A stretch of DNA of 64,000 bases from the IMG/VR virus record IMGVR_UViG_3300021964_009390, positions 1 to 64,000 of that record. One strand, written 5' to 3'. Below the pieces are notes generated by a model, which ran no database searches, was not told the DNA's origin, and saw only the letters and a program-made list of their open reading frames with translations. A program made the position numbers and the translations under genes. Numbering within the stretch: the stretch's first letter is position 1; each line of letters starts with the position of its first letter. This document shows, one piece after another, positions 5,757 to 32,660 of this stretch.

Positions 5757-5789
5757 ACACCGGTCTTAACCGACCGGTGTTTCTTTTTG
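5757..5789 (+). terminator. Intrinsic terminator after the major capsid gene, probably bidirectional
   Basis: Stem ACACCGGTC/GACCGGTGT with a 6-nt loop, followed by TTCTTTTT. The clpC stop codon lies in the loop. A second hairpin TAGAGCGT/ACGCTCTA sits at 5719-5747. Confidence 0.85.
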
Positions 5790-8228
5790 TTCAATTACAA
5801 TCTCGTCGTCATGTAGCTTGATTACTACATCAGTTGTCCGCTCATTTTTTAAAATGTATTTAGCGAGTGGAGTCTGTATATGTGTTTGTATAGCACGTCT
5901 CAACGGCCTGGCCCCGAATTTGCTATCAAACCCTCGATCAACTAACATATTCCTCACCGGCCTGGTGATTTCTAAGTTGATCTGTTTCATATTCATACGG
6001 GTTATAAATTTTTTCAACTCACTATTCAAAATCTTTTTACATACATCCAATGTGAGACTGTTAAACATTACAATTTCATCCAACCGGTTTAAAAATTCCG
6101 GACGTAGATATTGCTGCAATTGTTTCTTCACATTGTCTAAATTATCCTGTTCATTAGAACCAAACCCTACTACATGATTTTTCTGCATCCGATCCGCACC
6201 GATATTAGACGTCATTAAAATGATACAATTTCTAAAATTAATAGTCACTCCTCGGCTATCAGTCAACTGCCCCTCATCTAACAATTGCAACAACAACTGC
6301 ATCACATCCGGATGTGCTTTTTCTATCTCATCAAACAATACAACACTGTATGGATTGTACCGTATTTGCTCGGTAAGTTGCCCACCCTCACCGTAACCAA
6401 CATAACCCGGAGGACTGCCAATCAATTTGCTGACAGAATGTGATTCCATTAATTCGCTCATGTCCACACGAATCATATTATCCATGTCCCCGTATATATG
6501 TTCCGCTAGTTGTTTGGCTAGATATGTTTTACCCACACCTGTAGGTCCCATCAACAAGAATGACCCAACAGGTTTACCCGGTTCATTGACATCAGTACGA
6601 CCACGTATCACACTGTCGCAAATTAAATTTACTGCTTGCTGTTGCCCTATCACCTTTTTATTAATGGTTCTTTCTAGCGACAGCAGCTTTTTACTCTCGC
6701 TACGTTTCAAATGCTGCAACGGGACCCCGCACCAGTTGCTTACTGTTTTACGTATATCTTCTTCTGTTATGGTAGTGGTTTTCTGATTATTTTTCACCCG
6801 TTCTAATGCATTGTATTTTTTCTTACGTAATCGCTTCTCCGCTTCTCTGTATGTTGCAGCTGCGATATAATCATCTTTATCTAGAAACTCATGAATCAAC
6901 TGTACGCTGTCCTGAATTTTTTCATCTATAGACAATACCGACTTGGGTATCTTACCCTTAGCTAATTTGACACGAGCTGCACATTCATCTAGTACATCTA
7001 TCGCTTTGTCTGGAAAAAATCTATCTGATATGTACCGTTCACTCAAACTAACAGCCGCTTCTATCGCATCCGGTGTGAACTCTACACTATGAAAGTCTTC
7101 ATATTTATATTTCAACCCATCTAGTATGTCTATAACCATATCATATTCCGGTTCATCTACAACAATTTTTTGAAATCTACGCTCAAGAGCACCATCACTT
7201 TCTATAAACTCTCTGTATTCATCAAATGTAGTTGTACCGATACAGCAAATACCACCTCTACTTAACGCAGGTTTTAAAATATTGGCGGCATCCATAGCAC
7301 CGTCCGCGTTACCAGCTCCAACTAACATATGGATCTCATCAATAAACACAATAGCGTTGTCAATATTGAGTAAATCATCCATGACCTGTTTCATACGCTC
7401 TTCAAACTGTCCGCGGAATTTTGTACCAGCCACCATCAAAGACAAATCTAGATTGTATATGTTTTTGTCTTTCAATTGTACCGGTACTAGATCGGAGGCA
7501 ATCAAATTGCACAAACCTTCTACAACAGCAGTCTTCCCCACTCCCGGTTCACCTACTAGCACCGGGTTGTTCTTTTGCCGGCGGACTAGAACTTGCATAA
7601 CGCGTTCAATTTCCGAGTCTCTACCAATCACAGGATCTAGCTCCCCTTGTTTGGCAAGTTCTGTCATGTTGCTGCTGAACATACGCAAAGCTTCACCTGG
7701 TGCCACAGTTGTTTCTTCCCCTCCGGTACCAACATTTTGCTCTTCGTTTTTTGTACCCCCGTTTTCGATTTGTGGATTTAAATAAGCCCGTAGGCTTTGT
7801 GCTAATTCCGGAAGATCTACACTATGTTCATATAGAAAATTAAAAGCTGGGCATTCTGTATGACATACAACCCCTAGAAATATATGCTCGGTACCTATAA
7901 ATGAATGGTCCATTTTGATACTAATGTTCCTGGCGATTTGCAACACCTTGTCAACATCATCAGAAGCGGGGATCTTTATTTTAGCTTCTAGTTTAGGATC
8001 CACTTTTTTGATGTCTAAATTGTCTAGGTAATGATCCAAACGCTCGATTAACCGCGATACATCCACCCGCTGTTCGTTTGCTAGTATGTCACATATGTAA
8101 CTGCCTTGTGTGTTTAGTGTAGCATACAACAGATGTAATGTGTTGATCTCACCATGGTTATATTTCTTGGCTGTGATTTGAGCTGCCGCTAATAAATCGC
8201 TAGCGCGAGGTGTAAAATTATACATCAT
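5766..8228 (-). CDS. clpC: ClpC/ClpA-type AAA+ unfoldase (ClpP partner)
   Basis: Double Clp-N domain, two Walker A motifs (GEPGVGKT, GPTGVGKT), pore loops GTKFRG and GYVGY, short UVR-like middle domain, VGF ClpP-docking tripeptide. Confidence 0.92.
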   Translation of the reverse strand: MMYNFTPRASDLLAAAQITAKKYNHGEINTLHLLYATLNTQGSYICDILANEQRVDVSRLIERLDHYLDNLDIKKVDPKLEAKIKIPASDDVDKVLQIARNISIKMDHSFIGTEHIFLGVVCHTECPAFNFLYEHSVDLPELAQSLRAYLNPQIENGGTKNEEQNVGTGGEETTVAPGEALRMFSSNMTELAKQGELDPVIGRDSEIERVMQVLVRRQKNNPVLVGEPGVGKTAVVEGLCNLIASDLVPVQLKDKNIYNLDLSLMVAGTKFRGQFEERMKQVMDDLLNIDNAIVFIDEIHMLVGAGNADGAMDAANILKPALSRGGICCIGTTTFDEYREFIESDGALERRFQKIVVDEPEYDMVIDILDGLKYKYEDFHSVEFTPDAIEAAVSLSERYISDRFFPDKAIDVLDECAARVKLAKGKIPKSVLSIDEKIQDSVQLIHEFLDKDDYIAAATYREAEKRLRKKKYNALERVKNNQKTTTITEEDIRKTVSNWCGVPLQHLKRSESKKLLSLERTINKKVIGQQQAVNLICDSVIRGRTDVNEPGKPVGSFLLMGPTGVGKTYLAKQLAEHIYGDMDNMIRVDMSELMESHSVSKLIGSPPGYVGYGEGGQLTEQIRYNPYSVVLFDEIEKAHPDVMQLLLQLLDEGQLTDSRGVTINFRNCIILMTSNIGADRMQKNHVVGFGSNEQDNLDNVKKQLQQYLRPEFLNRLDEIVMFNSLTLDVCKKILNSELKKFITRMNMKQINLEITRPVRNMLVDRGFDSKFGARPLRRAIQTHIQTPLAKYILKNERTTDVVIKLHDDEIVIEQKETPVG

Positions 8229-8267
8229 ATATATTAATACTAATGTAACTATCTGTATTTTTCAACG

Positions 8268-8876
8268 TCATATTTTTTTAACAAAAAATGGTTCCCATTC
8301 CTCCCTGTAGTGTTTAAACACATGGAGATAGGGAAGCGGTTTTATTGGTGCTAGCTCGTTTCCGGCCACGTCTTTGAATGGATATATATTACCACGTGTG
8401 TTATTACAAGGCTTACATGTGAGAGTCAAATTAAAATCATCGTTTGTACCGTGTAAGCTTTTAGGTAATATATGCTCCACACTCATGTCACATATTGGTT
8501 TCTTATTACCGCATATCTGGCAACGACCGGAATAACGTTTGTACATGTATTTGACTGTAGGCTTGATTTTACAATTATAACTCCACTTAGATGTAGTCAA
8601 TAAAATAGTCGGTACAGGATATTTAGACTTGTTCGTTCGGACATACGGTTGATTGTTATATAACTCCCCCGGTGATGATTCGACCCATTGATCCCAGTTT
8701 TTAATGTTACTATGACTATCTATAACAAACACAGAACATTGAGTCCTAGATTTACCTTGGTCTCGGACTATTTTATGTACACTCTCCCGAGCTGATGTGA
8801 CTCCGATAGGTGTCCAAAACTTTGATAAGATCAATGTTATACTATCATACGGGTCACATATATATCCAACGCTCAT
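8268..8876 (-). CDS. HNH endonuclease (probable start MSVGY at 8876)
   Basis: RYSGRCQICG...SVEHILPKSLHGTNDDFNLTLTCKPCNNTRGN. Confidence 0.85.
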   Translation of the reverse strand: MSVGYICDPYDSITLILSKFWTPIGVTSARESVHKIVRDQGKSRTQCSVFVIDSHSNIKNWDQWVESSPGELYNNQPYVRTNKSKYPVPTILLTTSKWSYNCKIKPTVKYMYKRYSGRCQICGNKKPICDMSVEHILPKSLHGTNDDFNLTLTCKPCNNTRGNIYPFKDVAGNELAPIKPLPYLHVFKHYREEWEPFFVKKI

Positions 8877-8929
8877 ATATGTATATTTATATGTTGATAA
8901 TGCAGCTTCTACATTATATAATATGTTAT

Positions 8930-9730
8930 ATGAAAATTGAAGTTTCTCATGAGAGCCCGTTAAGCCTTTTAGATAAATCATTAGAATACAACGACTATTG
9001 TTACGCATTAGTACATCTGTTCGAACAATACCCGGAATATTATAATTTCTTCAAAAATGCAAAAGATGTTCATGACAAATGTGTGTATCTAGACAACAGT
9101 ATATTCGAACTAGGTACCAGCTTCGAACCTAAAAGTTACAGCAAATGGATAGAACAGCTGCAACCTAATGTGTATATCGTTCCGGACACATTAGAGGATG
9201 GTAAGGAGACAATTACACAATTTTATACATTCACTGGTGAATACACGAGTTTACCAGGTATAAAGATGGGAGTGGTTCAAGGTAAGACATATGATGATCT
9301 AGTTAGATGTTACAGTTTCATGAGCGAGTATGCAGATATTGTTGCTATAAGCTTTGACTATTCATACTATTTATCCACCGGAGTGGGTAACACTAAACTA
9401 GAAAGGTACATGAATGGTCGTAAAAAATTTATACAAGATTTAATAAATGAAAATCGATGGAACTGGGCAAAGCCAGTACATTTACTAGGTTGTAGTTTGG
9501 CTAGAGAATTCACATACTATGTAGACAACAACATACACAACATCAGAAGCTGTGACACATCAAACCCGATAGTTGCATCTATGTTCGATTTAAAATACAA
9601 TGATGAATGGGGATTGAATGAGAAACCATCGCAAAAATTAGCGGATATGTTAGAAGCAAACTTGAATGACGACCAAATGGAACTTTTAGAGTATAATTTG
9701 AAAATGTTTAAGAAAATTTTAAGAAGATGA
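8930..9730 (+). CDS. TGT-fold (tRNA-guanine transglycosylase-like) protein, DpdA-like candidate (probable start MKIEVSHE)
   Basis: YLDNSIFELG, IVPD, MGVVQG, HLLG and SCDTSNP match TGT barrel motifs; adjacent to QueF. Subfamily is inferred. Confidence 0.7.
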   Translation: MKIEVSHESPLSLLDKSLEYNDYCYALVHLFEQYPEYYNFFKNAKDVHDKCVYLDNSIFELGTSFEPKSYSKWIEQLQPNVYIVPDTLEDGKETITQFYTFTGEYTSLPGIKMGVVQGKTYDDLVRCYSFMSEYADIVAISFDYSYYLSTGVGNTKLERYMNGRKKFIQDLINENRWNWAKPVHLLGCSLAREFTYYVDNNIHNIRSCDTSNPIVASMFDLKYNDEWGLNEKPSQKLADMLEANLNDDQMELLEYNLKMFKKILRR

Positions 9731-10272
9731 CACGTGACCGTCCATGGATAGCCTTGTACAGTCATACTGGGTCTGAAATAGTAAATGTATCTAAAAAATT
9801 AGGAGCCCTTCCGGACCTGGTAGTAACAAACAACGATCGATCACTCATACATGTCAAACATTCACTCCGGACAGCATCTAAACCATCAGCAGTTGATTAC
9901 CGAACTGTATTCGACACTGTCGGTGAGAATCCAATAGTCACGCTGCATGGATGGATGAGAATTATTCCCGGTGAAATCTGCGAAGAATATGATATATACA
10001 ATTTGCACCCTGGGTTGATAACCAAATATCCAGAGCTCAAAGGTAAGGACCCGCAGCAAAGGGTATTTGAAATGCTAAACTCGCCACAATATGTTGGCTG
10101 TGTGTTACATCGAGCCATTGCTGAAGTAGATGCCGGTGATATTATCATGACCCGGAGCGTGTTCAACACATACATGTCCGTACATACATTGACAGATGTA
10201 TTGCATGAAATGGCCGGGTCAATGTGGGTAGATTTTTTCGAAAGAGAATTATATGATGAATCAAACCTTTAA
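9727..10272 (+). CDS. PurN-like formyltransferase (DpdN-like candidate)
   Basis: LHGWMRIIP, YNLHPGL and GCVLHRAIAEVDAGDII are 10-formyl-THF transferase motifs. Confidence 0.85.
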   Translation: MTRDRPWIALYSHTGSEIVNVSKKLGALPDLVVTNNDRSLIHVKHSLRTASKPSAVDYRTVFDTVGENPIVTLHGWMRIIPGEICEEYDIYNLHPGLITKYPELKGKDPQQRVFEMLNSPQYVGCVLHRAIAEVDAGDIIMTRSVFNTYMSVHTLTDVLHEMAGSMWVDFFERELYDESNL

Positions 10273-10537
10273 GTTAAAACCAATAAAAACCCCAGACGGT
10301 AAAATACACATAAGGGAAGTGTATTACACCTCAACCGGGTCGATATGCGATATAGAGATGCAAGTAAAACATCCATACACTGGTGATCGAGTGAAAGATT
10401 TAGAATATTTGAAACCACTATATTACAATGTGGAACAGTTCGGAATGTATGATGACCGAGTCATAAAATATGATCCGGACAATGACACTTTGGTTGAATG
10501 GGAATTACAAGAAGATGGTACCGTGGAGACATCTTAA
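10253..10537 (+). CDS. Hypothetical protein
   Basis: ORF with overlapping start/stop inside the operon. Confidence 0.55.
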   Translation: MMNQTFKLKPIKTPDGKIHIREVYYTSTGSICDIEMQVKHPYTGDRVKDLEYLKPLYYNVEQFGMYDDRVIKYDPDNDTLVEWELQEDGTVETS

Positions 10538-10695
10538 CAATCGAGGAAAATTGATGGTACTGTGTGTACCGTTAAACATGTACATAGCGATACTGTATGC
10601 TACAGCTGGAAGTTATCTCGCAATATTACCGGTATGTGCAGCGGCAATATGTGGCATGGCTACATATAATAAGAAATATCAAATTTACAATACAG

Positions 10696-11064
10696 ATGAG
10701 CAACCAAAATCAACAGACTCCCGAGAATAGACAATTCACCACCGGTGCGCAACGTGACACAGGAGAAGGTAAACTTCGAATGAGTTTAGTACCACAACAG
10801 GAATTAAAACGTGTAATGAAGCGTTACCTAGACGGTGCAAAAAAATATGGGGAGAACAACTGGATGAGAGGCATGCCGTTGAGTGTATATTACGATTGCG
10901 CGCATAGACATCTGGATGCATGGTGGCGTGGTGATGATGGAGAAGATCATGCAGCAGCTGTAGTATGGAACATGCTATGCGCCATGTGGACAGAAGCAAA
11001 CCACAATGATGATGAACATTTAGGGGATGGTTTAAATGATAAGTGGAAATTCCCTAGTGATTAG
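10696..11064 (+). CDS. dATP/dGTP diphosphohydrolase domain protein (DUF5664-like)
   Basis: FTTGAQRD..GKLRMSLVP, GAKKYGENNWMRG, RHL.AW..G...EDHAAAVVWN. Confidence 0.85.
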   Translation: MSNQNQQTPENRQFTTGAQRDTGEGKLRMSLVPQQELKRVMKRYLDGAKKYGENNWMRGMPLSVYYDCAHRHLDAWWRGDDGEDHAAAVVWNMLCAMWTEANHNDDEHLGDGLNDKWKFPSD

Positions 11065-11079
11065 TTTATAATATATACA

Positions 11080-14892: not shown

Positions 14893-16959
14893 ATGAGCCA
14901 ACAAGACATTTATAATTTATCCGACCTATTAACATCTACTGCATCAGAAACTGATTATGGTGCCTTGAATTGGACTGGTACTTTTGACGAATACCTGGAC
15001 ATAGTGAATGAAACTCCAAAAGTAACTAGGAACTCATATCAGCGTATGTATGACATGGTAATGTCCCATGGTACAGAGGAAGTCAATTACTGTAAACAAA
15101 CATATACAAAATATAAATTTTTCGCTAGCGGTAAGGATGGTGACATAAGTATTTACGGTTTGGAAGAACCGTTGATGGAACTTGTAGATGTATTGAGATC
15201 CGCTGCGTATCACTATGGACCAGAGCGCAGAATCATATTGCTGCACGGTCCAGTAGGTAGTAGCAAATCGACGATAGTAACCACATTGAAAAAGGGATTA
15301 GAACAATATTCAATCACCGATCCATTGTATTCATTCACCTGGTGTGTGGAAGATGATAATGGTACACCAGTTGAAGTTCCATGCCCCATGAATGAAGAGC
15401 CATTGAAATTGTTACCGGAAGCCGCTAGGAAGAACATTGTTGAACGTATCAACAATTCACTAGCCAACGATGATTATAGAATCAAACTAGATGGCAATTT
15501 GTCACCAGTGTCCGAGTTTTACAGAGATAAGTTGCTGAAAAAATATAACGGTGATTTTAACAAAGTACTATCACACGTCAAAGTGAGACGTGTTATATTG
15601 TCTGAAAAATCAAGAGTAGGTATAGGAACATTTCAACCGAAAGATGAAAAGAGTCAAGATGCTACTGAATTAACAGGCGACATAAACTACAGAAAGCTAG
15701 CTCAATATGGTAGTGAGAGTGACCCACGTGCTTTTGACTTTGATGGTGAATTTTTGATATCAAACAGAGGCATGGTTGAGTTTCAAGAGATCCTCAAATT
15801 GCAAACAGAGTTTTTGTACGACCTCTTGGGAGCCACGCAAGAGCATCGAGTCAAGCCTAAACGATTCAATCAAGTACCGATAGATGAAGTGATTATAGGT
15901 CACACCAACAACGCAGAATATGACAAGCTGAAAAACAATAAGTTCATGGAGGCTCTACGTGACAGAACCATAAAAATAGATGTACCGTACTTACTGAAAA
16001 TAAATGATGAGAAAAAAATATACGATTATTTCTACAATCAACACACGGTACACAAACACATCGCACCACATACTACATATCTTGCTGCGCTGTATGCAGT
16101 AGTGTCACGTCTAGAAAAACCGGTCAAGAATGACATGAGTATAATCCAAAAAGCAAAATTGTACAACGGAGTTGGTGTACATGGTTTCACAGAAGAACAT
16201 GTCAAGGAGATGTTAGAAGAGACACCTAACGAAGGTTTGTTGTCTGGTGTGAGTGCGCGTTTCATACAGAATCAATTTAGTAACGCTATTGTGAACCCTA
16301 GGATGGGTAAAAAAAGTATCAATCCTTTCATGCTGTTCTCGCAAATACGAGACGGTATCAAAAATTATTCCGGTTTCAACAGCGAGGATCTGCGCGCTGA
16401 AGCGTTAGAAAGATTGGAACTAGTCGAGAAAGAATATGACCGTATAGTGAAAAGAGAGGTACAACAAGCGCTCAGCAGTAGTGAAGAGGCCATCAAAACG
16501 TTGTGTACAAATTATATTGACAACGTTGTTGCTTTTGTAAACGATGAAAAGGTGACCAACCCCATTACTGGTAAAGATGAACCGGCTAATGAAAAGATGA
16601 TGAGATCTATTGAGGAAAAAATAAATGTCTCTACCAATATGAAAGAAGATTTCCGTCGTGAGATCATGAATTATATGGGTTCACTGGCAGCAAAAGGTAA
16701 GTCATTTAAATACGATAGTAACGAGCAATTGCATAAAGCCCTAGAAAAGAAGTTGTTTGAAGATATTAAAGACAGTATCAAACTATCCGCGCTGGCACAA
16801 GACACGGCCACTGTGGTAGACAAGGAGTTACTTGATAAAATCAACGCACTCAAGCAACGACTGGTGAAAGACTTTGGGTATGATGAAGATAGTGCTCATG
16901 ATGTTCTCGTGTATGTGGGGAGTATATTTGCCCGAGGTGACGACGTAGGAGACAAGTAA
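14893..16959 (+). CDS. prkA: PrkA/YeaG family AAA+ serine kinase
   Basis: LLHGPVGSSKST, GELxGDIN..L..YGSESDPRAFDFDGEF..SNRGMVEFQEILK, EALRDR, SGVSARF. Confidence 0.93.
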   Translation: MSQQDIYNLSDLLTSTASETDYGALNWTGTFDEYLDIVNETPKVTRNSYQRMYDMVMSHGTEEVNYCKQTYTKYKFFASGKDGDISIYGLEEPLMELVDVLRSAAYHYGPERRIILLHGPVGSSKSTIVTTLKKGLEQYSITDPLYSFTWCVEDDNGTPVEVPCPMNEEPLKLLPEAARKNIVERINNSLANDDYRIKLDGNLSPVSEFYRDKLLKKYNGDFNKVLSHVKVRRVILSEKSRVGIGTFQPKDEKSQDATELTGDINYRKLAQYGSESDPRAFDFDGEFLISNRGMVEFQEILKLQTEFLYDLLGATQEHRVKPKRFNQVPIDEVIIGHTNNAEYDKLKNNKFMEALRDRTIKIDVPYLLKINDEKKIYDYFYNQHTVHKHIAPHTTYLAALYAVVSRLEKPVKNDMSIIQKAKLYNGVGVHGFTEEHVKEMLEETPNEGLLSGVSARFIQNQFSNAIVNPRMGKKSINPFMLFSQIRDGIKNYSGFNSEDLRAEALERLELVEKEYDRIVKREVQQALSSSEEAIKTLCTNYIDNVVAFVNDEKVTNPITGKDEPANEKMMRSIEEKINVSTNMKEDFRREIMNYMGSLAAKGKSFKYDSNEQLHKALEKKLFEDIKDSIKLSALAQDTATVVDKELLDKINALKQRLVKDFGYDEDSAHDVLVYVGSIFARGDDVGDK

Positions 16960-18083
16960 TGCCCGGTCGCCGGATACGAGAAGATCACAGTGAATATCGT
17001 GATCTAATCAAAGACAAAGTAAAAAGCCGAGTCAAAGATCATATCAAAACCGGTAAAAAAGTCAAACGTCATGGGAAAGACTTGGTTGTTGTAGATATAC
17101 CTGTTATAGATCTACCGTCATTCCGCCATGGGAAAAGTAAATCTGATGGTGGTGTAGGTAACGGTCCAGTGGATGTAGGGGACGAAGTAGGTGATGGTCC
17201 ACAACAACCCGGAAAGGGTCAAGCTGGTGATCAACAAGCGGAGCATACAATGGGTGTAGGTGTTACTGTCGAAGACTATATTGATGTACTAGGTGATGAA
17301 CTAGAATTACCACGTCTAGTACCTAAACTGAGAGGTGATATAATAAATCAAAAGGTCAAATATAACGGTATTAGTCGAGTTGGTAACAATTGTCTGCTAC
17401 ATAAAAAGAAGACATTGAAAAATGCAATGAAACGCGTGATGTCTACCGGGTTATATAATCCTGACAATATATCTAATGTGTACCCAATAACACAAGACAA
17501 GGTATATAAAACATGGAACGTTGTTGACTCACCGGACATAAACGCAGTAGTATTTTTTTTACAGGATATAAGCTGGAGTATGGATGGTGAGAAAAGAGAT
17601 CTAGTAAGAGAACTATGCTGGTATCTGGAACAATGGATAAGAAAATTTTACAATCAAGTCGATTTAAAACATATTGTACACGATGTAGTGGCTCAAGAAG
17701 TTGATCAAGAAAAATTTTACAGTTTTGAAGCTGGAGGTGGTACCAAGATAAGCTCCGCCTTCGAATTGACGTCGGATATTATAGATAGTTCCTACCCGGC
17801 CGAGGATTGGAACATGTATGTCTTTTATTTCTCCGATGGTGAAAATTTTTCAAATGACACTAAGAGATGTATACAGTTATTAGAACAATTGCAAACCAAA
17901 TGCAATTTGATAGGGGTTGGAGAAGTCAAAGGTGTTACGGATTGGGCCGATTTCGCGCTATCAATAGAAGAGGAAATAGACAATAAAGTCCTAGACGAGG
18001 GTGTTATAACCACAAGCTCGATCGATTCACATGATGATGTGTTACGCGCAATTCAAGAATTTTTATCACCGGTTTCACGATGA
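16959..18083 (+). CDS. yeaH: YeaH/YhbH (DUF444) vWA-domain protein
   Basis: Gly-rich linker, MIDAS-like DISWS, GGTKISSA, YFSDGEN; translationally coupled to prkA. Confidence 0.9.
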   Translation: MPGRRIREDHSEYRDLIKDKVKSRVKDHIKTGKKVKRHGKDLVVVDIPVIDLPSFRHGKSKSDGGVGNGPVDVGDEVGDGPQQPGKGQAGDQQAEHTMGVGVTVEDYIDVLGDELELPRLVPKLRGDIINQKVKYNGISRVGNNCLLHKKKTLKNAMKRVMSTGLYNPDNISNVYPITQDKVYKTWNVVDSPDINAVVFFLQDISWSMDGEKRDLVRELCWYLEQWIRKFYNQVDLKHIVHDVVAQEVDQEKFYSFEAGGGTKISSAFELTSDIIDSSYPAEDWNMYVFYFSDGENFSNDTKRCIQLLEQLQTKCNLIGVGEVKGVTDWADFALSIEEEIDNKVLDEGVITTSSIDSHDDVLRAIQEFLSPVSR

Positions 18084-19690
18084 GACGTACAACATCTAGC
18101 AATTTATTACAACAGGGTGTAGGTACCGAGCTAGCCAAGCAAATCCCGGAGATCATTGATGTATGTAAAAAGGAAGGATTGGACCCATACGAACTGGTTA
18201 TTGAAGAATATACTGCTGACGAGATTGCGGAACTAGGAGCCTATGGTGGGTTCCCCGTGAGATACCCACACTTTTCATTTGGTCAGCAATACGAAACATT
18301 ACACCACCAGTATCACAGTGGTATGGGTAAGATATATGAAATGGTTGTGAATAACGATCCTACATACATGTATTTGCAGCGAAACAATCCAATAGTGGAC
18401 AATTTGACAGTTGTCGCTCATGCATTAGCACATTCTGATTTTTTTAAAAATAATATATACTTTGGTAACACCAACCGAAACATGATGAATGTGATGGCTA
18501 ACCATGGTCAAAAAATCCGGCAGTATATGAATATATACGGTAAATCTCGAGTGTCTAAATTTTTAGATGCCTGTTTGTCTGTCGATGATTTAATAGACCC
18601 GAACATTGTGTGGTCGGATCAACAATATAACAAACCTACAATAACGGAATTTGCACCACCGATAGAACAATTCACTCCGAAGCGTATAGGTACCAATCAT
18701 TACATGGACCATTATGTGAATACAGCCAAATTTTTAGAGAAGCAGCATAAATCACATTTGAGACAAAAAGCTCGCGCAGACAGTAAATATCCTTTGAAAC
18801 CAGTGAAAGACATACTGTTGTTCATACTACAACATGTCCGAATGGAACGCTGGCAGCAAAACATATTATCCATGGTACGTGACGAGAGCATCTATTTCCG
18901 TCCGCAAATGTTGACAAAAGTGTTAAACGAAGGTTGGGCTAGTTACTGGGATAGTTACATCATGACCAAATGTGGTTACGCAGGTGATGAAGGTATAATA
19001 CAATACGCGCAACACCATTCAGGGGTGTTAGGTGGTAAATATGCAATGAGTAACCCGTACAGATTGGGTAACTGTTTGCTCCGTCATGTGGAGGATCGAT
19101 GGAACAAAGGGCAGTTCGGCCGGGCATGGGACAACTGTGATGACGAATTCAAAAGAAAATCATGGGACACTAAAGCTAGTCAAGGTCGCGACAAAATATT
19201 TGAAGTTCGTCGCGATTATAATGACGTTAATTTTATAAACGAATTTTTTACACCGGAATTTTGTGACGAGCATGAATATTTTGAATACCAATTGGACCCG
19301 GAAACAAACAAATACGTGGTTGTGAGCAAGGATTATGACAAAATTAAATCTAAATTGCTGCAACGTTACACGAATGGTGGTCGCCCTAGTATAGTGCTCA
19401 CAAATTTTGACAAGTCTGGTATAGAATTGAGACATCGGTATGAAGGCATGGAACTAGAGAGTAATTATGTTGAAAGTACCATGAAGATGTTGTATAATAT
19501 TATAAATATGCCAATTGTATTGAAATCCAAAGCGTATGTATCTAAAAAGAAAAAGGTATATGGTGCAGTGTTTGCTGTCGCGGAAGAGGAAGAAGAACTA
19601 TGTGGTCGTGTGTTTAAATATGATGGTAAGACGTTCAAGTCATGGGAAGACTACAAACAACGTGACTTTCCCAACTACCAAATTACATGA
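18080..19690 (+). CDS. spoVR: SpoVR/YcgB family protein
   Basis: GGFPVRYPHFSFG, IYEMVVNNDP, AHALAHSDFFKNN, TKVLNEGWASYW, NPYRLG. Confidence 0.93.
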   Translation: MRRTTSSNLLQQGVGTELAKQIPEIIDVCKKEGLDPYELVIEEYTADEIAELGAYGGFPVRYPHFSFGQQYETLHHQYHSGMGKIYEMVVNNDPTYMYLQRNNPIVDNLTVVAHALAHSDFFKNNIYFGNTNRNMMNVMANHGQKIRQYMNIYGKSRVSKFLDACLSVDDLIDPNIVWSDQQYNKPTITEFAPPIEQFTPKRIGTNHYMDHYVNTAKFLEKQHKSHLRQKARADSKYPLKPVKDILLFILQHVRMERWQQNILSMVRDESIYFRPQMLTKVLNEGWASYWDSYIMTKCGYAGDEGIIQYAQHHSGVLGGKYAMSNPYRLGNCLLRHVEDRWNKGQFGRAWDNCDDEFKRKSWDTKASQGRDKIFEVRRDYNDVNFINEFFTPEFCDEHEYFEYQLDPETNKYVVVSKDYDKIKSKLLQRYTNGGRPSIVLTNFDKSGIELRHRYEGMELESNYVESTMKMLYNIINMPIVLKSKAYVSKKKKVYGAVFAVAEEEEELCGRVFKYDGKTFKSWEDYKQRDFPNYQIT

Positions 19691-21881: not shown

Positions 21882-21888
21882 AGGTACA

Positions 21889-23834: not shown

Positions 23835-23853
23835 TTGGAGACTAAATAAACAT

Positions 23854-24033
23854 ATGAGTGAAACACATGAAAATATCTTAGAAGCAATTGATGCTTATCT
23901 AGAAGAAAACGCTAAATTTGAAGAAAAAGGTGTAAAAGCTGCCGCGACTAGGGCGCGTAAAGCTCTTATGGATCTTAAAAATTTGGCGCATGATCGGCGG
24001 AAAGAGATACAGGACAAGAAAAACTCCGGGTAA
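23854..24033 (+). CDS. Small basic histone H1-like/Hc1-type protein (59 aa); missing from the ORF track
   Basis: Translated by hand as MSETHENILEAIDAYLEENAKFEEKGVKAAATRARKALMDLKNLAHDRRKEIQDKKNSG; contains the KG.KAA.TRARKA motif. Confidence 0.75.
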   Translation: MSETHENILEAIDAYLEENAKFEEKGVKAAATRARKALMDLKNLAHDRRKEIQDKKNSG

Positions 24034-28803: not shown

Positions 28804-28814
28804 GCCGTGTAACC

Positions 28815-28840
28815 AAAAAAAAGCCCTCCGAAGAGGGCTT
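28815..28840 (-). terminator. Intrinsic terminator with cUUCGg tetraloop
   Basis: The minus strand reads AAGCCCTC-TTCG-GAGGGCTT-TTTTTT. Confidence 0.9.
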
Positions 28841-28863
28841 AGTCAATAGACTTCTTGATCTTG

Positions 28864-29103: not shown

Positions 29104-29160
29104 ATCCCCAATATTTATTCTAGACACTATCATTAGCAACTACTTTCAATAAATATACAT

Positions 29161-29439
29161 ATGTCTATCAAAACTTTCAAACAGTATGTGGAGATGCTCG
29201 CCCGGGACGCGAAAAAAGGAGACAAGATTAAAAACATTAATCCTGACTGTGAACATCATGGGTCTGAAGGTGAAATAGAAGATGTGGTTGACTTACCAGA
29301 AAAAGGATCAAAACAAGTAAAGAGCAAGCACAACATGCCAGGTAAGCTAATCAAATATAAAGTTTCTAATACCGATGGTAAAAATTATGATTCTGGTGAC
29401 ACGTTATACAAGGACCCGAGTCAACTTAAAAAACGCTAG
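29161..29439 (+). CDS. Putative virion protein (IKTFKQYVE N-terminus)
   Basis: N-terminal motif plus TAAATA 5 nt upstream. Confidence 0.6.
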   Translation: MSIKTFKQYVEMLARDAKKGDKIKNINPDCEHHGSEGEIEDVVDLPEKGSKQVKSKHNMPGKLIKYKVSNTDGKNYDSGDTLYKDPSQLKKR

Positions 29440-29456
29440 ACTTGTAGTCTATATAA

Positions 29457-31646
29457 TTAATTTTGTTCTAACTTCTTAATATACACTCCCCATACACAAT
29501 TTTCCAGGAGAGCTTCTCCTGCCCATTCCACGTCCTTTAAATTTAAAATATTTTCGAACCCAGACTCATGCCACTGCCACCGTCCGGAACCATAAATTCT
29601 ATCGTATGCCTCTTGGTTTCTAGCAAAATCATGCAACATCAATACATCCCCTTCTTCAGCTATAGGTGAGTAAGTCCCGAACTCTGCGTTTTTTGAATTA
29701 CCGTCTACGAGCCAGCAAGTTTTTTTATCTTGAGCTAGCTTCCGCAAATGCTCTATTGTCTTGGTATTAAAACAATCAAGAGGTTTAAATTTTATATTAT
29801 TAAATGTATCAAACATCTTTTGAGAGTGCCTGGGGAATGGGTCAATCGTATGTATCGGAGTTTGAGGACAAATAGTTGCCAAAAAGGCAGTCAGGCCCCC
29901 CTCCCCTGTACCTAGTTCAATAATTAAATCAAACTTGTTACGAGAAAAGTAATCATGGAAGGCGTGGTACGCTCCTGGATGTTGTTGTGATCGTAAACCT
30001 TTTAGGGAATCGCTCCACCCTCCTTCAAAACAAGGTCCGTTATATTCAGATTTGGATGTACGTAATAGTATGTCAAGCTCATCCGTACCAAGGTAAGTAT
30101 CTATTAGTCGTTGAAGTAAAAAGTCTTCCGGCATGATACCTTTTTGATGATGCCGGATTTGAGACGAATGTAGAGTTACTACAACTGTATCTTCGAGTAC
30201 AATATCGTCTAGCGGGATCGTTGCTGATTTGTATATGTCACTAAACGAGCCATGCCGGCTTTGCGCAAACTGAAGAGAGATTACATTCTCATCAATATAT
30301 TTTACTAAATTTCTATAACCGAGCTCTTTAATACCATATTTTGTAGGAGTGTTTAACAAATCTCCCCAGCCGATATGCAAGGACATAACAGCATTTACAG
30401 ATTCCATTACCTTTTTGAACACTTGAGACCTAGGCCTACATGCCATCGCGCAGATGTTAACGCTACCACACCCCGCATTTTCGAGAGGTTGAACCTGATC
30501 ATGTGTCCATGTATGGCTCATAATAGACTCGTACAGGTCTCCTACAACAAACATATCAGCGTCTAACCACATACCCCCATTCTCGTACAAGACCCTTTGC
30601 CGAGCGTAATCTGATTTAAATTCAACACATAGTGAGTCATATTCTTCTGGTATATCGTCAAACGTTGATTTTAACTTTTCAGTGTTCCACACTTCGAAGA
30701 CGCAATTAGAATTCTTTTCCATAGACTGTAAACATTTTTCAATGAAATACGGTTTTTCTCCCTCCCAAAATGTGAATAGTTTCCTTTCTTCGAAGAATCG
30801 CCAATCGTAACTGTCTAGTCTGTCAATAAGTGCGGTTCTTTCTTCTTCTGTGAATTCTTGATCAAACCTTTTCAAATGCAAATTCTCCATGATGAAATCA
30901 AAATACGTAGCCCCTGGATACAAAGGCCGGCCTGAGCCAGTATCGTTATTTTGAGTAGTGATTCCCTCAGATGTACATTGCAAATGGACATACGAAGGTT
31001 TACCTCTGTTAGGGTCTCCCCAATAATATACAAAACTATGGTCACCCATACCAACTGCTGGGTCTATACAGAGCATTTCAAATTTGGATGTCCATTGAGG
31101 ATGAGGGTGTTGCTTTTCCGCTTGCATGTTACCGAATCCATAATGGTCTAAAACGGATTTTTTGACTACAATACAACCTTCACAGTAATTGCGTATTGCG
31201 TTAATTTTAGGATACATCTCCAAATTGCTGTCTATTTGAAGCTGTTCTGTTGGCTTACAACCAAGATGTGTACCTTTATTCAACCACTTGACGGCATTGG
31301 ACAAATGCCACGGTAGGTAAATATCATCATCATCCCATATAGCGACGTATTCCGAATGCTGACCACCAAAACTGTCCACGTATGTAAGAGCCTTGTTATA
31401 TACATCCGAGATCGACTCAAACTCACCGGCGTTTATTAGACGTATGTTGTGTTGCTGTTTTAAAAATTCAGACAACTTTATTTCTACTCGGTGATTGTTA
31501 AAAATAATCAGCTCTTTATTAGGATAATCCTGTAACATAAAATACGATATAGCTGAACGTAATAACTCATATCGCCCCTTCGTCGCGCAAAGGCATGTCA
31601 CTTTAGGTACACCGTAAATGTATTCTGGTTCCGGCTTAACTTCCAT
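29457..31646 (-). CDS. Three-domain fusion: GT2 glycosyltransferase + GT32/capsular DxD glycosyltransferase + class I SAM methyltransferase
   Basis: N-terminus CATKGR...IWDDDDIYLP; middle FKSDYARQRVLYENGGMWLDAD; C-terminus IIELGTGEGG...LVDG...LMLHD. Confidence 0.8.
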   Translation of the reverse strand: MEVKPEPEYIYGVPKVTCLCATKGRYELLRSAISYFMLQDYPNKELIIFNNHRVEIKLSEFLKQQHNIRLINAGEFESISDVYNKALTYVDSFGGQHSEYVAIWDDDDIYLPWHLSNAVKWLNKGTHLGCKPTEQLQIDSNLEMYPKINAIRNYCEGCIVVKKSVLDHYGFGNMQAEKQHPHPQWTSKFEMLCIDPAVGMGDHSFVYYWGDPNRGKPSYVHLQCTSEGITTQNNDTGSGRPLYPGATYFDFIMENLHLKRFDQEFTEEERTALIDRLDSYDWRFFEERKLFTFWEGEKPYFIEKCLQSMEKNSNCVFEVWNTEKLKSTFDDIPEEYDSLCVEFKSDYARQRVLYENGGMWLDADMFVVGDLYESIMSHTWTHDQVQPLENAGCGSVNICAMACRPRSQVFKKVMESVNAVMSLHIGWGDLLNTPTKYGIKELGYRNLVKYIDENVISLQFAQSRHGSFSDIYKSATIPLDDIVLEDTVVVTLHSSQIRHHQKGIMPEDFLLQRLIDTYLGTDELDILLRTSKSEYNGPCFEGGWSDSLKGLRSQQHPGAYHAFHDYFSRNKFDLIIELGTGEGGLTAFLATICPQTPIHTIDPFPRHSQKMFDTFNNIKFKPLDCFNTKTIEHLRKLAQDKKTCWLVDGNSKNAEFGTYSPIAEEGDVLMLHDFARNQEAYDRIYGSGRWQWHESGFENILNLKDVEWAGEALLENCVWGVYIKKLEQN

Positions 31647-31681
31647 GAAGTTATTTATATACAGCTGTATATCTGTTCAAC

Positions 31682-32221
31682 TTATTGTTGAGCAGGCTGT
31701 TGCTGTTGCTGAGCAGGCTGTTGCTGTTGCTGAGCAGGCTGTTGCTGTTGCTGAGCAGGCTGTTGCTGAGCAGGCTGTTGCTGTTGCTGAGCAGGCTGTT
31801 TACCCAACTGCTGTTGAACTTGTTGTATCAGTTGCTCCACTTTGCCGATACGCTGATCTATTGCAGCAATTTTCTGAACGTTAGTGTCAATCTCTTGCTC
31901 TTGTGTTTGGTCTAGTTGATCAGCCGCTTGTTGCGCCTTCTCGATACCTTGTGCTTGTTGAGCATCCACCTCCGCTTCTTGTGAAGCTTGTTGTTCTGCG
32001 TCTTGCGCTTGTTGGTCTACTTGTCCTTGTAAATTGTCAATTTGTGTTCCTGCATCCTTACCTCGAGCGGCATCCACCGTGTCTTGTATTGCGGTGCTGA
32101 TTCCCCCGGTGGCTATATCTAAAGCATGCCCTCCTGCAGTCTTCGCGGCATTTTTCATGTTCTGCCAGTTAACCTCGTTAATTTTAACGTACTGTTTGTA
32201 AATATCATCAACTTTGCTCAT
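31682..32221 (-). CDS. Gln-rich late protein with a PAQQQQQ repeat tail
   Basis: TAAATA 5 nt upstream; coiled-coil-like Q/A-rich body. Confidence 0.75.
   Translation of the reverse strand: MSKVDDIYKQYVKINEVNWQNMKNAAKTAGGHALDIATGGISTAIQDTVDAARGKDAGTQIDNLQGQVDQQAQDAEQQASQEAEVDAQQAQGIEKAQQAADQLDQTQEQEIDTNVQKIAAIDQRIGKVEQLIQQVQQQLGKQPAQQQQQPAQQQPAQQQQQPAQQQQQPAQQQQQPAQQ
31690..31800. repeat. 21-bp tandem repeat GAGCAGGCTGTTGCTGTTGCT (4 full copies, one 15-bp copy, one partial copy)
   Basis: Read directly; encodes QQQQQPA on the minus strand. Confidence 0.95.
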
Positions 32222-32276
32222 GTTATTATTTATTTAGTTGCACCGGATAACAATATAATATATAATAAATAATTAC

Positions 32277-32660
32277 GGGCCTGTAAAGGATTCGACGTTC
32301 ATTGACAGTTAACAACCGCAAGTGAGAGAGATGCCTGGCTCTCTAAAAAGGCATACCCGCATACTTGGCGATATTCAAGATGCTAAGCGTGGTGTTCAAG
32401 AGGTCCTTCACGGGATCTTCTCCGAGCAGCCCGCTCTCTTGGCAGCTTAAGCTGTCACGTGTCACCCCGGATGCTCGATAAGGGAGTGATGCGTCAACAT
32501 CGAGCAAGCACCAGATATGTTGTCTGTTGATGACTGGTGTTGAAACTCAAATCGAAACAGGATAGGAGGTCTGCAGCCGAGAACAGTAGACTAAACTTGT
32601 GAACGAGGTGTTAACCAGAGATGTTAACGGACGCCGGTTCGACTCCGGCCAGGTCCACCA
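32277..32660 (+). ncRNA. ssrA: tmRNA (transfer-messenger RNA), 384 nt
   Basis: 5' GGGCCTG pairs with 3' CAGGTCC-ACCA, including the G3:U alanine determinant. Also GGATTCGAC, the T-arm GCCGG-TTCGACT-CCGGC, pseudoknot 1 (GAGAGAG/CTCTCT with ATGCCT/AGGCAT), and a tag ORF ending ALLAA-TAA. Confidence 0.95.

What the first reader, a model, noticed from the sequence alone, without database searches (positions are those of the whole stretch)
5766..32660. Phage-encoded proteostasis toolkit: ClpC + tmRNA + PrkA/YeaH AAA+-vWA pair
Seen: a full ClpC with a VGF ClpP-docking loop, a tmRNA whose tag ends in LAA, and an AAA+ PrkA with a MIDAS-bearing partner. No ClpP or SmpB is present in the window. Inference: the phage supplies both the degron-adding RNA and an unfoldase that borrows host ClpP, redirecting ribosome rescue and proteolysis. 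This fits with heavy leaderless translation, or with countering tRNA/mRNA-cleaving abortive defences.
Basis: partly seen in the sequence, partly recalled or inferred. Interest (0 to 1): 0.72.

Follow-up and report, generated by a model that had tools for sequence, protein, structure and literature searches.

The report
Phage-borne ClpC, tmRNA and PrkA cassette
A 222-kb marine T4-like phage carries its own protein-unfolding motor (ClpC) and its own ribosome-rescue RNA (tmRNA) with an unusually long tag; both need host partners and may work together, while the PrkA stress operon is a separate add-on, and only the possible ClpC-tag pairing is new.

Summary
They are a full ClpC (5766-8228, minus strand) with a VGF ClpP-docking loop, a tmRNA (32277-32660; Rfam 90 bits against a cut-off of 47) whose 27-residue tag ends in LAA, and PrkA plus YeaH. 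The whole 222-kb phage record has no ClpP, SmpB, MecA or ClpS.

The parts are not one locus. They are spread over 27 kb among unrelated genes and have different histories. ClpC is fixed beside the gp23 capsid gene in a monophyletic clade of uncultured marine T4-like jumbo phages. The tmRNA belongs to a phage-only family with strong covariation and three classes of long tag. It occurs with ClpC in all three genomes I could read far enough. The PrkA trio is a cassette found only in the nearest relative.

A structure model docks the body of the tag onto ClpC's N-domain (score 0.85; best control 0.02). That surface is a hydrophobic groove peculiar to the phage clade. The model is a lead, not proof.

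Each part is of a known kind. The possible private tag-and-degrade pairing is the novel element (probability about 0.4). The host is unresolved: PVC or Bacteroidota.

The parts
5766..8228 (-). ClpC-type double-ring AAA+ unfoldase, 820 aa. It is conserved in the clade and sits divergently next to the gp23 capsid gene.
   Evidence: Pfam domains. Motifs. PDB ClpC match at E about 1e-213. PHROG 4871 'ATP-dependent protease' at 813 bits. A 29-member monophyletic phage clade with support 1.0. Synteny with gp23 in six contigs.
6162..6170 (-). Codons for the VGF tripeptide of the ClpP-docking loop (residues 687-689).
   Evidence: Sequence. G688 and F689 are invariant and V687 is at least 90% conserved in 16 clade members. 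All sampled clade members read HVVGFG, and bacterial ClpC reads [FLMIV]GF at the same columns.
7734..8228 (-). ClpC N-domain (residues 1-165), remodelled in the phage clade. The GTEH motif of repeat 1 is replaced by [NTS][TS]LH. Repeat 2 keeps GTEH. A hydrophobic surface peculiar to the clade spans residues 98-151.
   Evidence: This is the surface that contacts the tag in the model.
14893..16959 (+). PrkA/YeaG-type AAA+ protein, 688 aa. Its Walker A variant reads GPVGSSKS.
   Evidence: PF08298 at 294 bits and PF06798 at 239 bits. PHROG 22605. 90% identical to the copy in L087.
16959..18083 (+). YeaH/DUF444 vWA-like partner, 374 aa, with the MIDAS-type motif DISWS. Its start overlaps the PrkA stop codon.
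   Evidence: PF04285 at 232 bits. Motif and gene junction.
18080..19690 (+). SpoVR/YcgB, 536 aa, the third member of the bacterial trio. It overlaps YeaH and NeuB by ATGA junctions.
   Evidence: PF04293 at 363 bits. Junctions.
32277..32660 (+). One-piece tmRNA with a G3:U wobble pair and an encoded CCA end.
   Evidence: ARAGORN. Rfam at 90.3 bits. A 10-member family alignment has 71 predicted pairs, 29 of them with compensatory changes, and G3:U in 10 of 10. RNA-library contigs cover only this stretch.
32367..32450 (+). Tag reading frame: GGC resume codon, 27 codons and a TAA stop.
   Evidence: Within tag class 1, pN is below pS in most pairs.
32258..32276 (+). AT-rich ATAAATAAT-type motif ending 4 nt before the mature 5' end of the tmRNA. 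The same motif sits 0-9 nt before many start codons, so it is probably a phage promoter element.
   Evidence: The consensus sigma-70 scan did not call it.
31682..32221 (-). Gln-rich 179-aa ORF, divergent from the tmRNA and adjacent to it in most relatives. It is a syntenic neighbour and is not SmpB.
   Evidence: It has no Pfam or PHROG hit.

Best explanation
The window is the left end of an uncultured marine/estuarine T4-like jumbo phage. The phage carries two conserved, host-dependent proteostasis parts and one unrelated add-on.

(1) ClpC. It is an active-looking ClpC-type unfoldase. The phage has no ClpP, and the docking loop is conserved, so ClpC most likely docks on the host's ClpP ring to form a hybrid protease (inferred).

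(2) tmRNA. It is charged and delivered by host AlaRS, EF-Tu and SmpB (inferred from its canonical tRNA-like domain and the lack of a phage SmpB). It rescues stalled ribosomes and appends a 27-residue tag. The tag ends in the usual LAA degron, but its body is an amphipathic helix that is conserved at the peptide level.

The two are most likely coupled. The tag body would dock in a hydrophobic groove, peculiar to the phage clade, on the second repeat of ClpC's N-domain. Tagged chains would then be pulled into phage ClpC and host ClpP, giving the phage a private tag-and-degrade route that clears truncated proteins and recycles amino acids. This step is modelled, not shown.

(3) PrkA-YeaH-SpoVR. 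This is a separately acquired, variable copy of the bacterial yeaG-yeaH-ycgB starvation/stress operon and is not part of that route.
For: Both parts look real and under selection.
- ClpC motifs are intact and the VGF loop is conserved across a clade with 50-78% identity.
- The tmRNA scores above the Rfam threshold. It has 29 compensatory pairs and an invariant G3:U. It is found in two metatranscriptomes at 98-99.6% identity, with zero depth on the flanks.

Both depend on the host.
- No ClpP, SmpB, MecA, ClpS or ArfB/RF-1 is found in 222 kb.

They are linked by co-occurrence.
- ClpC and a class-1 tmRNA sit on the same contig in the window, in scaffold_9 (ClpC 68% identical) and in scaffold_356.

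Evidence for coupling.
- The complex model of ClpC 1-165 with the 27-residue tag scored ipSAE 0.85 in all three runs; the best of 3 controls scored 0.02. In the tool's calibration that mark was reached by 51 of 78 solved complexes and 2 of 108 mismatched pairs.
- Contacts fall on tag residues 3, 6-7, 9-14, 17-18 and 20. The hydrophobic positions I3, A6, V10, V/I13, L14, I17 and F18 do not vary among class-1 tags.
- The contacted ClpC residues are more conserved than their neighbours (0.79 against 0.68; permutation p = 0.04). They are hydrophobic or small where bacterial ClpC is charged: I102 for E, C122 for K, T124 for K, F129 for A, A143 for R.
- Within class-1 tags pS is 0.2-0.36 and pN is 0.02-0.13 in most pairs.

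The PrkA trio is separate.
- It is present only in the window and L087. It is absent at the same junction in L085 and in L088/L256.
Against: - The docking job lies outside the tool's calibration, because the partner is shorter than 30 residues. Any amphipathic helix might be placed in a hydrophobic groove. I could not run the other tag classes or the host-type tag as controls, because only one job is allowed.
- From established knowledge, ssrA-tagged proteins go mainly to ClpXP, and to ClpAP, Lon and FtsH. In B. subtilis they go to ClpXP rather than ClpCP.
- The tag keeps a canonical [LM]AA end, which host ClpXP would suffice to read.
- The tmRNA family has three very different tag bodies, whereas the ClpC groove is fairly conserved. 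I could not establish which tag class goes with which ClpC.
- One allele ends in PLTA.
- The genes lie 24-47 kb apart on different strands. Co-occurrence in three related genomes is not phylogenetically independent.
- ClpC-type enzymes usually need an adaptor, and none was found.
Confidence: 0.42

Rival explanations
1. The modules are independent. The tmRNA only raises ribosome-rescue capacity during infection, when host mRNA decay and short-leader or leaderless phage messages produce many stalled ribosomes. Its products are degraded by host ClpXP through the LAA end. ClpC uses host ClpP on other substrates, such as host regulators or defence proteins. The two share only the phage.
For: - The tag ends in the canonical [LM]AA in nearly all family members.
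- The genes are far apart, on opposite strands, and in a different relative order in relatives.
- Phage tmRNAs without a phage Clp ATPase are well known (mycobacteriophages Bxz1-type, Bacillus phage G, huge phages; PMC4131195, PMC7162821).
- Jumbo phages with ClpA, ClpX or ClpS but no reported tmRNA link are also known (PMC7824862).
Against: This reading does not explain three things:
- why the tag is 18-35 residues long and conserved at the peptide level;
- why the ClpC N-domain has a hydrophobic groove peculiar to the clade;
- the docking score of 0.85 against 0.02.
Confidence: 0.38
2. ClpC is a ClpP-independent assembly chaperone or unfoldase for the head module. For example, it could remodel gp23 or the scaffold, in the way T4 uses gp31 with GroEL.
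For: - ClpC sits next to gp23, the scaffold gene and the gp21 protease gene in all six contexts read.
- The genome has no GroES/gp31 homologue.
- Iyer et al. proposed virion-assembly roles for Clp ATPases of jumbo phages (PMC7824862).
Against: - The ClpP-docking loop is invariant in the clade, whereas stand-alone disaggregases of the ClpB/Hsp104 type lack it (established knowledge).
- ClpC is on the opposite strand from the head genes, so it is a separate transcription unit.
Confidence: 0.1
3. The phage tmRNA acts mainly as a competitor or modulator of host trans-translation. It would titrate SmpB, or replace the host tag, so that the fate of tagged proteins or host sensing of stalled ribosomes changes, rather than feeding proteolysis.
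For: - A tRNA-like-domain-only tmRNA from mycobacteriophage DS6A inhibits host tmRNA (PMC4131195, PMC11915505).
- The phage tag differs strongly from the 9-residue Gly-first tags of candidate host phyla.
Against: - The tag frame, its stop codon and the [LM]AA end are conserved.
- The whole RNA covaries like a working tmRNA.
Confidence: 0.08

Closest known systems
Bacterial ClpC (B. subtilis or S. aureus ClpC, M. tuberculosis ClpC1) working with ClpP
   Same: It has the same architecture: a double Clp_N N-domain, D1, a short M-domain, D2, an [LIV]GF ClpP loop and D2-small. It is 42-45% identical over its full length. The aromatic M-domain residue aligned to the F of the QEFE motif is kept as Y.
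   Different: - It is encoded by a phage that has no ClpP, MecA or ClpS.
- It forms a monophyletic phage clade on a long stem (0.62 substitutions per site).
- The GTEH glutamate of N-domain repeat 1 is lost. From memory of Trentini et al. 2016, this is one of the two phospho-arginine sites.
- The surface of repeat 2 has turned hydrophobic.
- The UVR motif (PF02151) is not detected, unlike in most bacterial hits.
Clp-system genes of jumbo phages (ClpP, ClpS, ClpA, ClpX; Iyer et al. 2021, PMC7824862) and the 'moraphage' lineage, whose near-core set includes a Clp ATPase (VOG02072; Perez-Hernandez et al. 2025, PMC12619734)
   Same: Both are large phages that encode a Clp ATPase presumed to exploit host machinery. 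Moraphages share T4-type structural genes, an Hc1 histone-like gene, many glycosyltransferases and HSP20. All of these are also seen here or in this clade.
   Different: - Those papers list the gene without analysing it.
- Neither reports a docking loop, N-domain remodelling, a tmRNA or PrkA (0 mentions).
- I could not test whether this phage belongs to the moraphages, because no moraphage sequences were available.
Phage-encoded tmRNAs (mycobacteriophage cluster C such as Bxz1, Bacillus phage G, huge phages; PMC4131195, PMC7162821)
   Same: It is a complete tmRNA carried by a large lytic-type phage, without (here) a phage SmpB.
   Different: - It belongs to a distinct family found on 18 marine contigs whose flanks match this phage group.
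- Its diagnostic 25-mer, and its 18-mer as part of a tmRNA, are absent from the GTDB species genomes.
- The resume codon is Gly, and the tags are 18-35 residues long, in three classes.
Bacterial yeaG(prkA)-yeaH-ycgB(spoVR) stress/starvation trio, and its copies in Thermus phages phiYS40/TMA, Ralstonia phage RsoM2USA and huge phages
   Same: It has the same three families in the same order, translationally coupled. PrkA hits 17 GenBank phage records. RsoM2USA is annotated with PrkA and SpoVR (PMC8504454). PrkA has been reported to be a Lon-like ATP-dependent protease (PMC9512850), and YeaG to act in nitrogen starvation (PMC4664914).
   Different: Here it is a cassette inserted between a 121-aa ORF and NeuB in one subclade of a T4-like phage. 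The Walker A motif reads GPVGSSKS.
SspB/ssrA-tag adaptor logic and phospho-arginine marking for ClpC
   Same: The proposed idea is the same: a part of the degron other than the C-terminal residues is read by an accessory binding site that feeds a Clp unfoldase (established knowledge).
   Different: Here the accessory site would be the N-domain of the unfoldase itself, and the extra element would be written into the tag by a phage RNA. This is modelled only.

Membership tests
ClpC (class I Clp/Hsp100 unfoldase that partners with ClpP) | Two AAA+ modules with intact Walker A and Walker B motifs | tested here: met
   Walker A is GEPGVGKT and GPTGVGKT. Walker B is IVFIDE and VVLFDE. Pfam finds AAA, AAA_lid_9 and AAA_2.
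ClpC (class I Clp/Hsp100 unfoldase that partners with ClpP) | N-terminal double Clp_N repeat | tested here: met
   PF02861 hits repeat 2. Both repeats align to the S. aureus ClpC N-domain. In repeat 1 the GTEH motif is degenerate.
ClpC (class I Clp/Hsp100 unfoldase that partners with ClpP) | Short M-domain, half the length of ClpB's, with a UVR-like motif | tested here: inconclusive
   The length is ClpC-like: one continuous alignment to ClpC against two stretches to ClpB. However, PF02151 (UVR) is absent from the clade's precomputed domains, whereas most bacterial hits have it. The motif reads D[DE]Y..AATYR instead of QEFE.AA.LRD.
ClpC (class I Clp/Hsp100 unfoldase that partners with ClpP) | [LIV]-G-[FL] ClpP-docking loop in D2 | tested here: met
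   VGF is at residues 687-689. It is conserved across the clade.
ClpC (class I Clp/Hsp100 unfoldase that partners with ClpP) | Physical docking on ClpP and adaptor-regulated activity | not testable with these tools
   The record has no ClpP, MecA or ClpS. The host is unknown.
tmRNA (Rfam RF00023) | Covariance-model score above the curated threshold, over the full length | tested here: met
   90.3 bits against a cut-off of 47, covering model positions 1-374.
tmRNA (Rfam RF00023) | tRNA-like domain with a G3:U70 pair for AlaRS and a 3' CCA end | tested here: met
   The ends read GGGCCUG...CAGGUCCACCA. G:U is present in 10 of 10 family members, and there are compensatory changes at pair 4.
tmRNA (Rfam RF00023) | In-frame tag ORF with a resume codon, a stop codon and a hydrophobic C-terminal degron | tested here: met
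   The frame has a GGC resume codon, 27 codons and a TAA stop, and the tag ends in ALLAA.
tmRNA (Rfam RF00023) | Structure maintained by covariation in relatives | tested here: met
   29 of 71 predicted pairs show changes on both sides.
tmRNA (Rfam RF00023) | Presence as RNA | tested here: met
   Two metatranscriptome runs hold contigs of 248-288 nt at 98-99.6% identity over 32327-32614, with zero depth on the flanking genes. These are assembler contigs, so DNA carry-over is unlikely but cannot be excluded.
tmRNA (Rfam RF00023) | A cognate SmpB partner | tested here: not met
   PF01668 is absent from the record. The conserved neighbouring ORF is a Gln-rich low-complexity protein and is not SmpB. 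A host SmpB would be required. This does not affect membership as an RNA family.
PrkA/YeaG-YeaH-YcgB(SpoVR) trio | PrkA AAA domain plus the PrkA C-terminal domain | tested here: met
   PF08298 at 294.5 bits and PF06798 at 238.8 bits.
PrkA/YeaG-YeaH-YcgB(SpoVR) trio | Canonical Walker A motif (the Lys needed for ATPase and protease activity in B. subtilis PrkA; PMC9512850) | tested here: inconclusive
   The motif reads GPVGSSKS. Lys and Ser are kept, but the Gly before the Lys is Ser. The copy in L087 is the same.
PrkA/YeaG-YeaH-YcgB(SpoVR) trio | DUF444 vWA-like partner with a MIDAS DxSxS motif, and SpoVR, adjacent in one operon | tested here: met
   PF04285 and PF04293 hit. DISWS is at residue 203. 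Stop and start codons overlap as TAATG and ATGA.
Integrated 'proteostasis toolkit' (ClpC + tmRNA + PrkA pair as one system) | Co-inheritance of all parts across related genomes | tested here: not met
   ClpC and the tmRNA occur together in 3 of 3 genomes. The PrkA cassette is absent from two of those and from the L085 site.
Moraphage lineage (PMC12619734) | Shared core genes and phylogenetic placement with the 25 published genomes | not tested
   No moraphage sequences were available. The shared traits (T4-type core genes, a Clp ATPase, Hc1, HSP20, glycosyltransferase islands, aquatic origin) are resemblance only.

The most novel reading that the evidence does not exclude
The phage runs an orthogonal degradation code. 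Its own tmRNA writes a long helical tag onto stalled nascent chains. The remodelled N-domain of its own ClpC reads the body of that tag, and ClpC then feeds the chain into the captured host ClpP. Tag classes and ClpC grooves would co-diversify among related phages.
Probability: 0.3. Interest if true: 0.82.

Novelty: new variant of a known kind. Interest (0 to 1): 0.55.

Why it matters
Phage tmRNAs have been catalogued for twenty years without a demonstrated function. Phage Clp ATPases are listed in surveys but have not been studied. This lineage offers a concrete hypothesis that can be tested at the bench: a tag body docking in a defined groove, and a hybrid protease made of phage ClpC and host ClpP. 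If it holds, it shows how a virus can privatise host proteolysis and ribosome rescue in nutrient-poor seas. It would also provide an orthogonal degron-and-unfoldase pair for synthetic biology. If it fails, the result is still useful. It would mean that a conserved phage ClpC and a family of long-tag tmRNAs act separately, and that the PrkA trio is simply a mobile stress cassette.

Tried and rejected
- The conserved ORF next to the tmRNA (31682-32221) as a divergent SmpB: rejected. It is a Gln-rich low-complexity protein with no family hit.
- A recent bacterial origin for the tmRNA: no support. The family's invariant 25-mer is absent from the GTDB species genomes. The 18-mer hits there are chance matches, not tmRNAs. 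Only the 3' 32 nt match in 301 Verrucomicrobiota and 401 Bacteroidota genomes.
- Close relatives in the GenBank phage collection: none by DNA. The ClpC protein hits there are at most 45% identical, and many are unannotated fragments that look bacterial. The capsid protein is at most 34% identical to any cultured phage.
- Close ClpC relatives in the held IMG/VR set: none above 50% identity.
Kin cannot be drawn for a virus record. I walked along contigs gene by gene instead.
- A sigma-70 promoter for the tmRNA: the consensus scan finds none on the plus strand. A phage-type AT-rich motif is there instead.
- A second Clp-like gene at genome position 103.6 kb: it is a ribonucleotide reductase.
- Other chaperone or rescue genes in the genome: no Cpn10, DnaK, DnaJ, RF-1/ArfB or CCA-adding enzyme. 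Only an HSP20 was found.

Full report
WHAT THE WINDOW IS

The window is bases 1-64000 of a 222,461-bp IMG/VR virus record that CheckV rates as 100% complete. Its left end holds a T4-type head module. The 518-aa protein at 4150-5706 matches PHROG 138 (major head protein), and a scaffold-like protein precedes it. In relatives the same block contains Pfam Gp23, Peptidase_S77 (gp21), Portal_T4 and Phage_T4_gp13. The capsid protein is at most 34% identical to that of any cultured phage, and cyanomyoviruses are marginally the closest. So this is a deep, uncultured T4-like lineage. Near-identical DNA is found in estuary and marine metagenomes.

ClpC (5766-8228, minus strand, 820 aa) has the following features:
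- Clp_N, two AAA+ modules, AAA_lid_9 and ClpB_D2-small domains.
- Both Walker A and both Walker B motifs, and VGF at residues 687-689.
- A single continuous alignment to solved S. aureus and B. subtilis ClpC (E about 1e-213). ClpB aligns in two pieces because its middle domain is longer.

The tmRNA (32277-32660) is called by ARAGORN and scores 90.3 bits over the full Rfam model, against a cut-off of 47. Its tag is GDIQDAKRGVQEVLHGIFSEQPALLAA.

The three genes, and the NeuB gene after them, overlap by TAATG or ATGA junctions. This is the bacterial yeaG-yeaH-ycgB trio.

The whole record has no ClpP, SmpB, MecA, ClpS, Cpn10 or RF-1/ArfB. One caveat applies. The identical ClpC also sits on contigs of 228.7 and 230.0 kb, so a few kb of the genome may be missing from the record.

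THE THREE PARTS HAVE DIFFERENT HISTORIES

ClpC:
- A search of 5.8 billion proteins found 28 metagenomic clusters at 51-78% identity. Below that there is a sharp drop to 47% or less for bacterial ClpC.
- In a tree of 118 sequences the 29 phage-type proteins are monophyletic, with support 1.0 and a stem of 0.62 substitutions per site.
- In every context I could fetch, ClpC lies divergently beside gp23.

PrkA trio:
- The next 20 kb is collinear with relatives, except for an HNH endonuclease (8268-9008) and the PrkA trio.
- The trio is present at the same site only in the closest relative, L087, where ClpC is 78% and PrkA 90% identical.
- In L085 and in L088/L256 the 121- to 143-aa ORF is followed directly by NeuB.
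- The trio is therefore a variable cassette.
- It is not new to phages. PrkA hits 17 GenBank phage records, including Thermus phiYS40/TMA, Ralstonia RsoM2USA and huge phages (PMC8504454). PHROGs already has families for PrkA, YeaH and SpoVR, and also one for ClpC.

THE tmRNA BELONGS TO A PHAGE-RESIDENT FAMILY

- Origin. A 25-mer from pseudoknot 1 is absent from 185,579 species genomes but present on 18 marine metagenome contigs. The flanking ORFs of those contigs all have homologues in this phage at 50-85% identity.
- Structure. Ten family members align with an invariant 5' third. RNAalifold predicts 71 pairs, 29 with changes on both sides. The G3:U pair is present in all ten, and pair 4 shows C-G, A-U and U-A.
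- Tags. Read from the conserved GGC resume codon, the tags fall into three classes of 26-27, 18 and 35 residues. Nearly all end in [LM]AA, and one allele ends in PLTA.
- Selection on the tag. Within class 1, synonymous divergence exceeds non-synonymous divergence in most pairs (pS 0.2-0.36, pN 0.02-0.13). The counts are small. This suggests that the peptide itself is under selection, not only its C-terminal end.
- Expression. Contigs from two metatranscriptomes cover only the tmRNA (248-288 nt, 98-99.6% identical), and the neighbouring genes have zero depth. In DNA runs the tmRNA stretch is 10-60 times deeper than its flanks. I read that as many related phages sharing conserved tmRNA segments.
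- Promoter. An ATAAATAAT-type motif ends 4 nt before the mature 5' end. The same motif sits 0-9 nt upstream of many start codons.

DO ClpC AND THE tmRNA TRAVEL TOGETHER?

I walked along two relatives gene by gene. Scaffold_9 is a 208.7-kb contig whose ClpC is 68% identical. It has a class-1 tmRNA (Rfam 99.4 bits) about 40 kb from ClpC, again beside the Gln-rich ORF. Scaffold_356 (57.5 kb) has ClpC at one end and a class-1 tmRNA about 30 kb away. Neither has the PrkA trio at the syntenic site. So ClpC and the tmRNA co-occur in 3 of 3 genomes that could be read far enough. These genomes are kin, so this is weak evidence of a functional link. I could not establish which ClpC goes with the class-2 and class-3 tags.

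IS THERE A DIRECT LINK?

- The phage ClpC N-domain differs from bacterial ClpC in a consistent way. The GTEH motif of repeat 1 has become [NTS][TS]LH across the whole clade, while repeat 2 keeps GTEH. From my memory of Trentini et al. 2016, these glutamates form the two phospho-arginine sites of B. subtilis ClpC.
- The one complex prediction allowed, ClpC 1-165 with the 27-residue tag, scored ipSAE 0.85 in all three runs. The best of three controls scored 0.02. In the tool's calibration that mark was reached by 51 of 78 solved complexes and 2 of 108 mismatched pairs. The tool warns that a partner under 30 residues lies outside its calibration.
- The contacts are ClpC residues 98-151 and tag residues 3, 6-7, 9-14, 17-18 and 20. 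That is the body of the tag, not the LAA end. The hydrophobic positions there do not vary among class-1 alleles.
- The contacted ClpC residues are more conserved in the phage clade than their neighbours (0.79 against 0.68; permutation p = 0.04). They are hydrophobic or small where bacterial ClpC is charged: I102 for E, C122 for K, T124 for K, F129 for A, A143 for R.
- Together these results give a coherent picture of a new peptide groove that could read the tag. None of them is a measurement, and I could not run the obvious specificity controls.

MECHANISM

Shown by sequence:
- an intact ClpC with a conserved ClpP loop;
- an intact, covarying tmRNA that is present in RNA libraries;
- no phage ClpP, SmpB or adaptor.

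Inferred from established knowledge of these families:
- ClpC must dock on host ClpP;
- the tmRNA must use host AlaRS, EF-Tu and SmpB.

Modelled only:
- the tag body docks on the ClpC N-domain, so that tagged chains go to the hybrid protease.

I put this coupled reading at about 0.42. The uncoupled reading, in which the tmRNA raises rescue capacity and ClpC has other substrates, is at about 0.38. A ClpP-independent assembly role is at about 0.10, and a modulator role for the tmRNA at about 0.08.

The PrkA trio is most simply a borrowed starvation/stress module. PrkA has been reported as a Lon-like ATP-dependent protease (PMC9512850) and YeaG as a nitrogen-starvation factor (PMC4664914). I found nothing that ties the trio to ClpC or the tmRNA.

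HOST

- A DUF1549/DUF1553 protein (49004-51052) lies next to the tmRNA in several relatives. Its nearest bacterial clusters are Verrucomicrobiota and Planctomycetota.
- Some Verrucomicrobiota have Gly-first tags (GEEQFALAA) that resume at the same position.

Other evidence points elsewhere:
- The phage genes lack Shine-Dalgarno motifs (10% against an 11% background). From general knowledge this is typical of Bacteroidota.
- The published moraphage lineage looks like this one, and most of its members are predicted to infect Bacteroidota (PMC12619734).

The host remains open.

NOVELTY

Phage tmRNAs are known (PMC4131195, PMC7162821). So are Clp-system genes in jumbo phages (PMC7824862) and in moraphages (PMC12619734, Table 2), and so are phage copies of PrkA and SpoVR (PMC8504454). 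Four things appear to be undescribed: the long-tag tmRNA family, the clade-wide remodelling of the ClpC N-domain, the co-occurrence of the two, and the modelled contact between tag and N-domain. I rate the finding a new variant of a known kind, with moderate interest.

Noticed in passing
window 8268-9008 (-): An HNH endonuclease ORF (PF14279, PF01844) lies directly upstream of ClpC on the same strand. It has no counterpart in the collinear relatives L085 and L084, so it is probably a homing-endonuclease insertion.
   Followed up: partly
window 9727-12535 (+): This gene run has homologues in relatives that carry Formyl_trans_N, dGTP_diPhyd_N (PF18909), AAA_28 and QueF_N/QueF. It looks like a 7-deazaguanine-type nucleotide or DNA modification cluster, and it is conserved across the clade.
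   Followed up: no
window 19687-20535, 21841-22548 and about 29400-43000: NeuB and a CMP-sugar transferase-like gene suggest nonulosonic acid synthesis. They are followed by a large island of glycosyltransferases and sulfotransferases whose content differs completely between relatives.
   Followed up: partly
window about 23850-24030 (+); L085:10561-10740: A 59-aa Hc1 histone H1-like ORF (PF07432) is conserved in relatives. The same family is highlighted in the published moraphages (PMC12619734).
   Followed up: no
whole genome; for example window 12554, 21324, 44120, 57630, 58497, 59777 (+) and 31659, 8891 (-): Shine-Dalgarno-like motifs upstream of 248 ORFs are at background level (10% against 11%). 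A [TC]ATAAATA(AT) motif sits 0-9 nt before many ATG codons. This implies leaderless or very short-leader mRNAs driven by a T4-late-like promoter element. The same motif precedes the tmRNA and the divergent Gln-rich ORF.
   Followed up: partly
window 49004-51052 and 58513-59781 (+): These are DUF1549/DUF1553 (PSCyt2/PSD1) and DUF1501 proteins, families typical of Planctomycetota and Verrucomicrobiota. In several relatives they flank the tmRNA directly.
   Followed up: partly
window 31682-32221 (-): This Gln-rich 179-aa protein has C-terminal (QQPAQQQQ)n repeats. It lies next to the tmRNA in most relatives. When reads were laid, its repeat DNA (31697-31753) drew depths in the thousands from other organisms.
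   Followed up: partly
genome 73977-74270 (-), outside the window (L276): An HSP20 small heat-shock protein (82.6 bits) is the only other chaperone-type gene found in the genome.
   Followed up: no
L256:12640-14115 and L257:16146-17621: The scaffold_356 relative encodes a CCA-adding enzyme (PolyA_pol plus HD) between ClpC and the tmRNA. This genome has none.
   Followed up: no
L217 and L222 (metagenome contigs): One class-1 tmRNA allele ends its tag in APLTA instead of [LM]AA. The otherwise identical tag in scaffold_9 and scaffold_356 ends in APLAA.
   Followed up: no
L094-L168 (IMG/VR contigs): Many IMG/VR contigs carry permuted (two-piece) tmRNAs that share the same acceptor 3' strand. Several have 24-31-residue tags, for example the ANADTFDFSAMSFTGNTV... 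type. Long tags on viral or prophage contigs are therefore not confined to this lineage.
   Followed up: no
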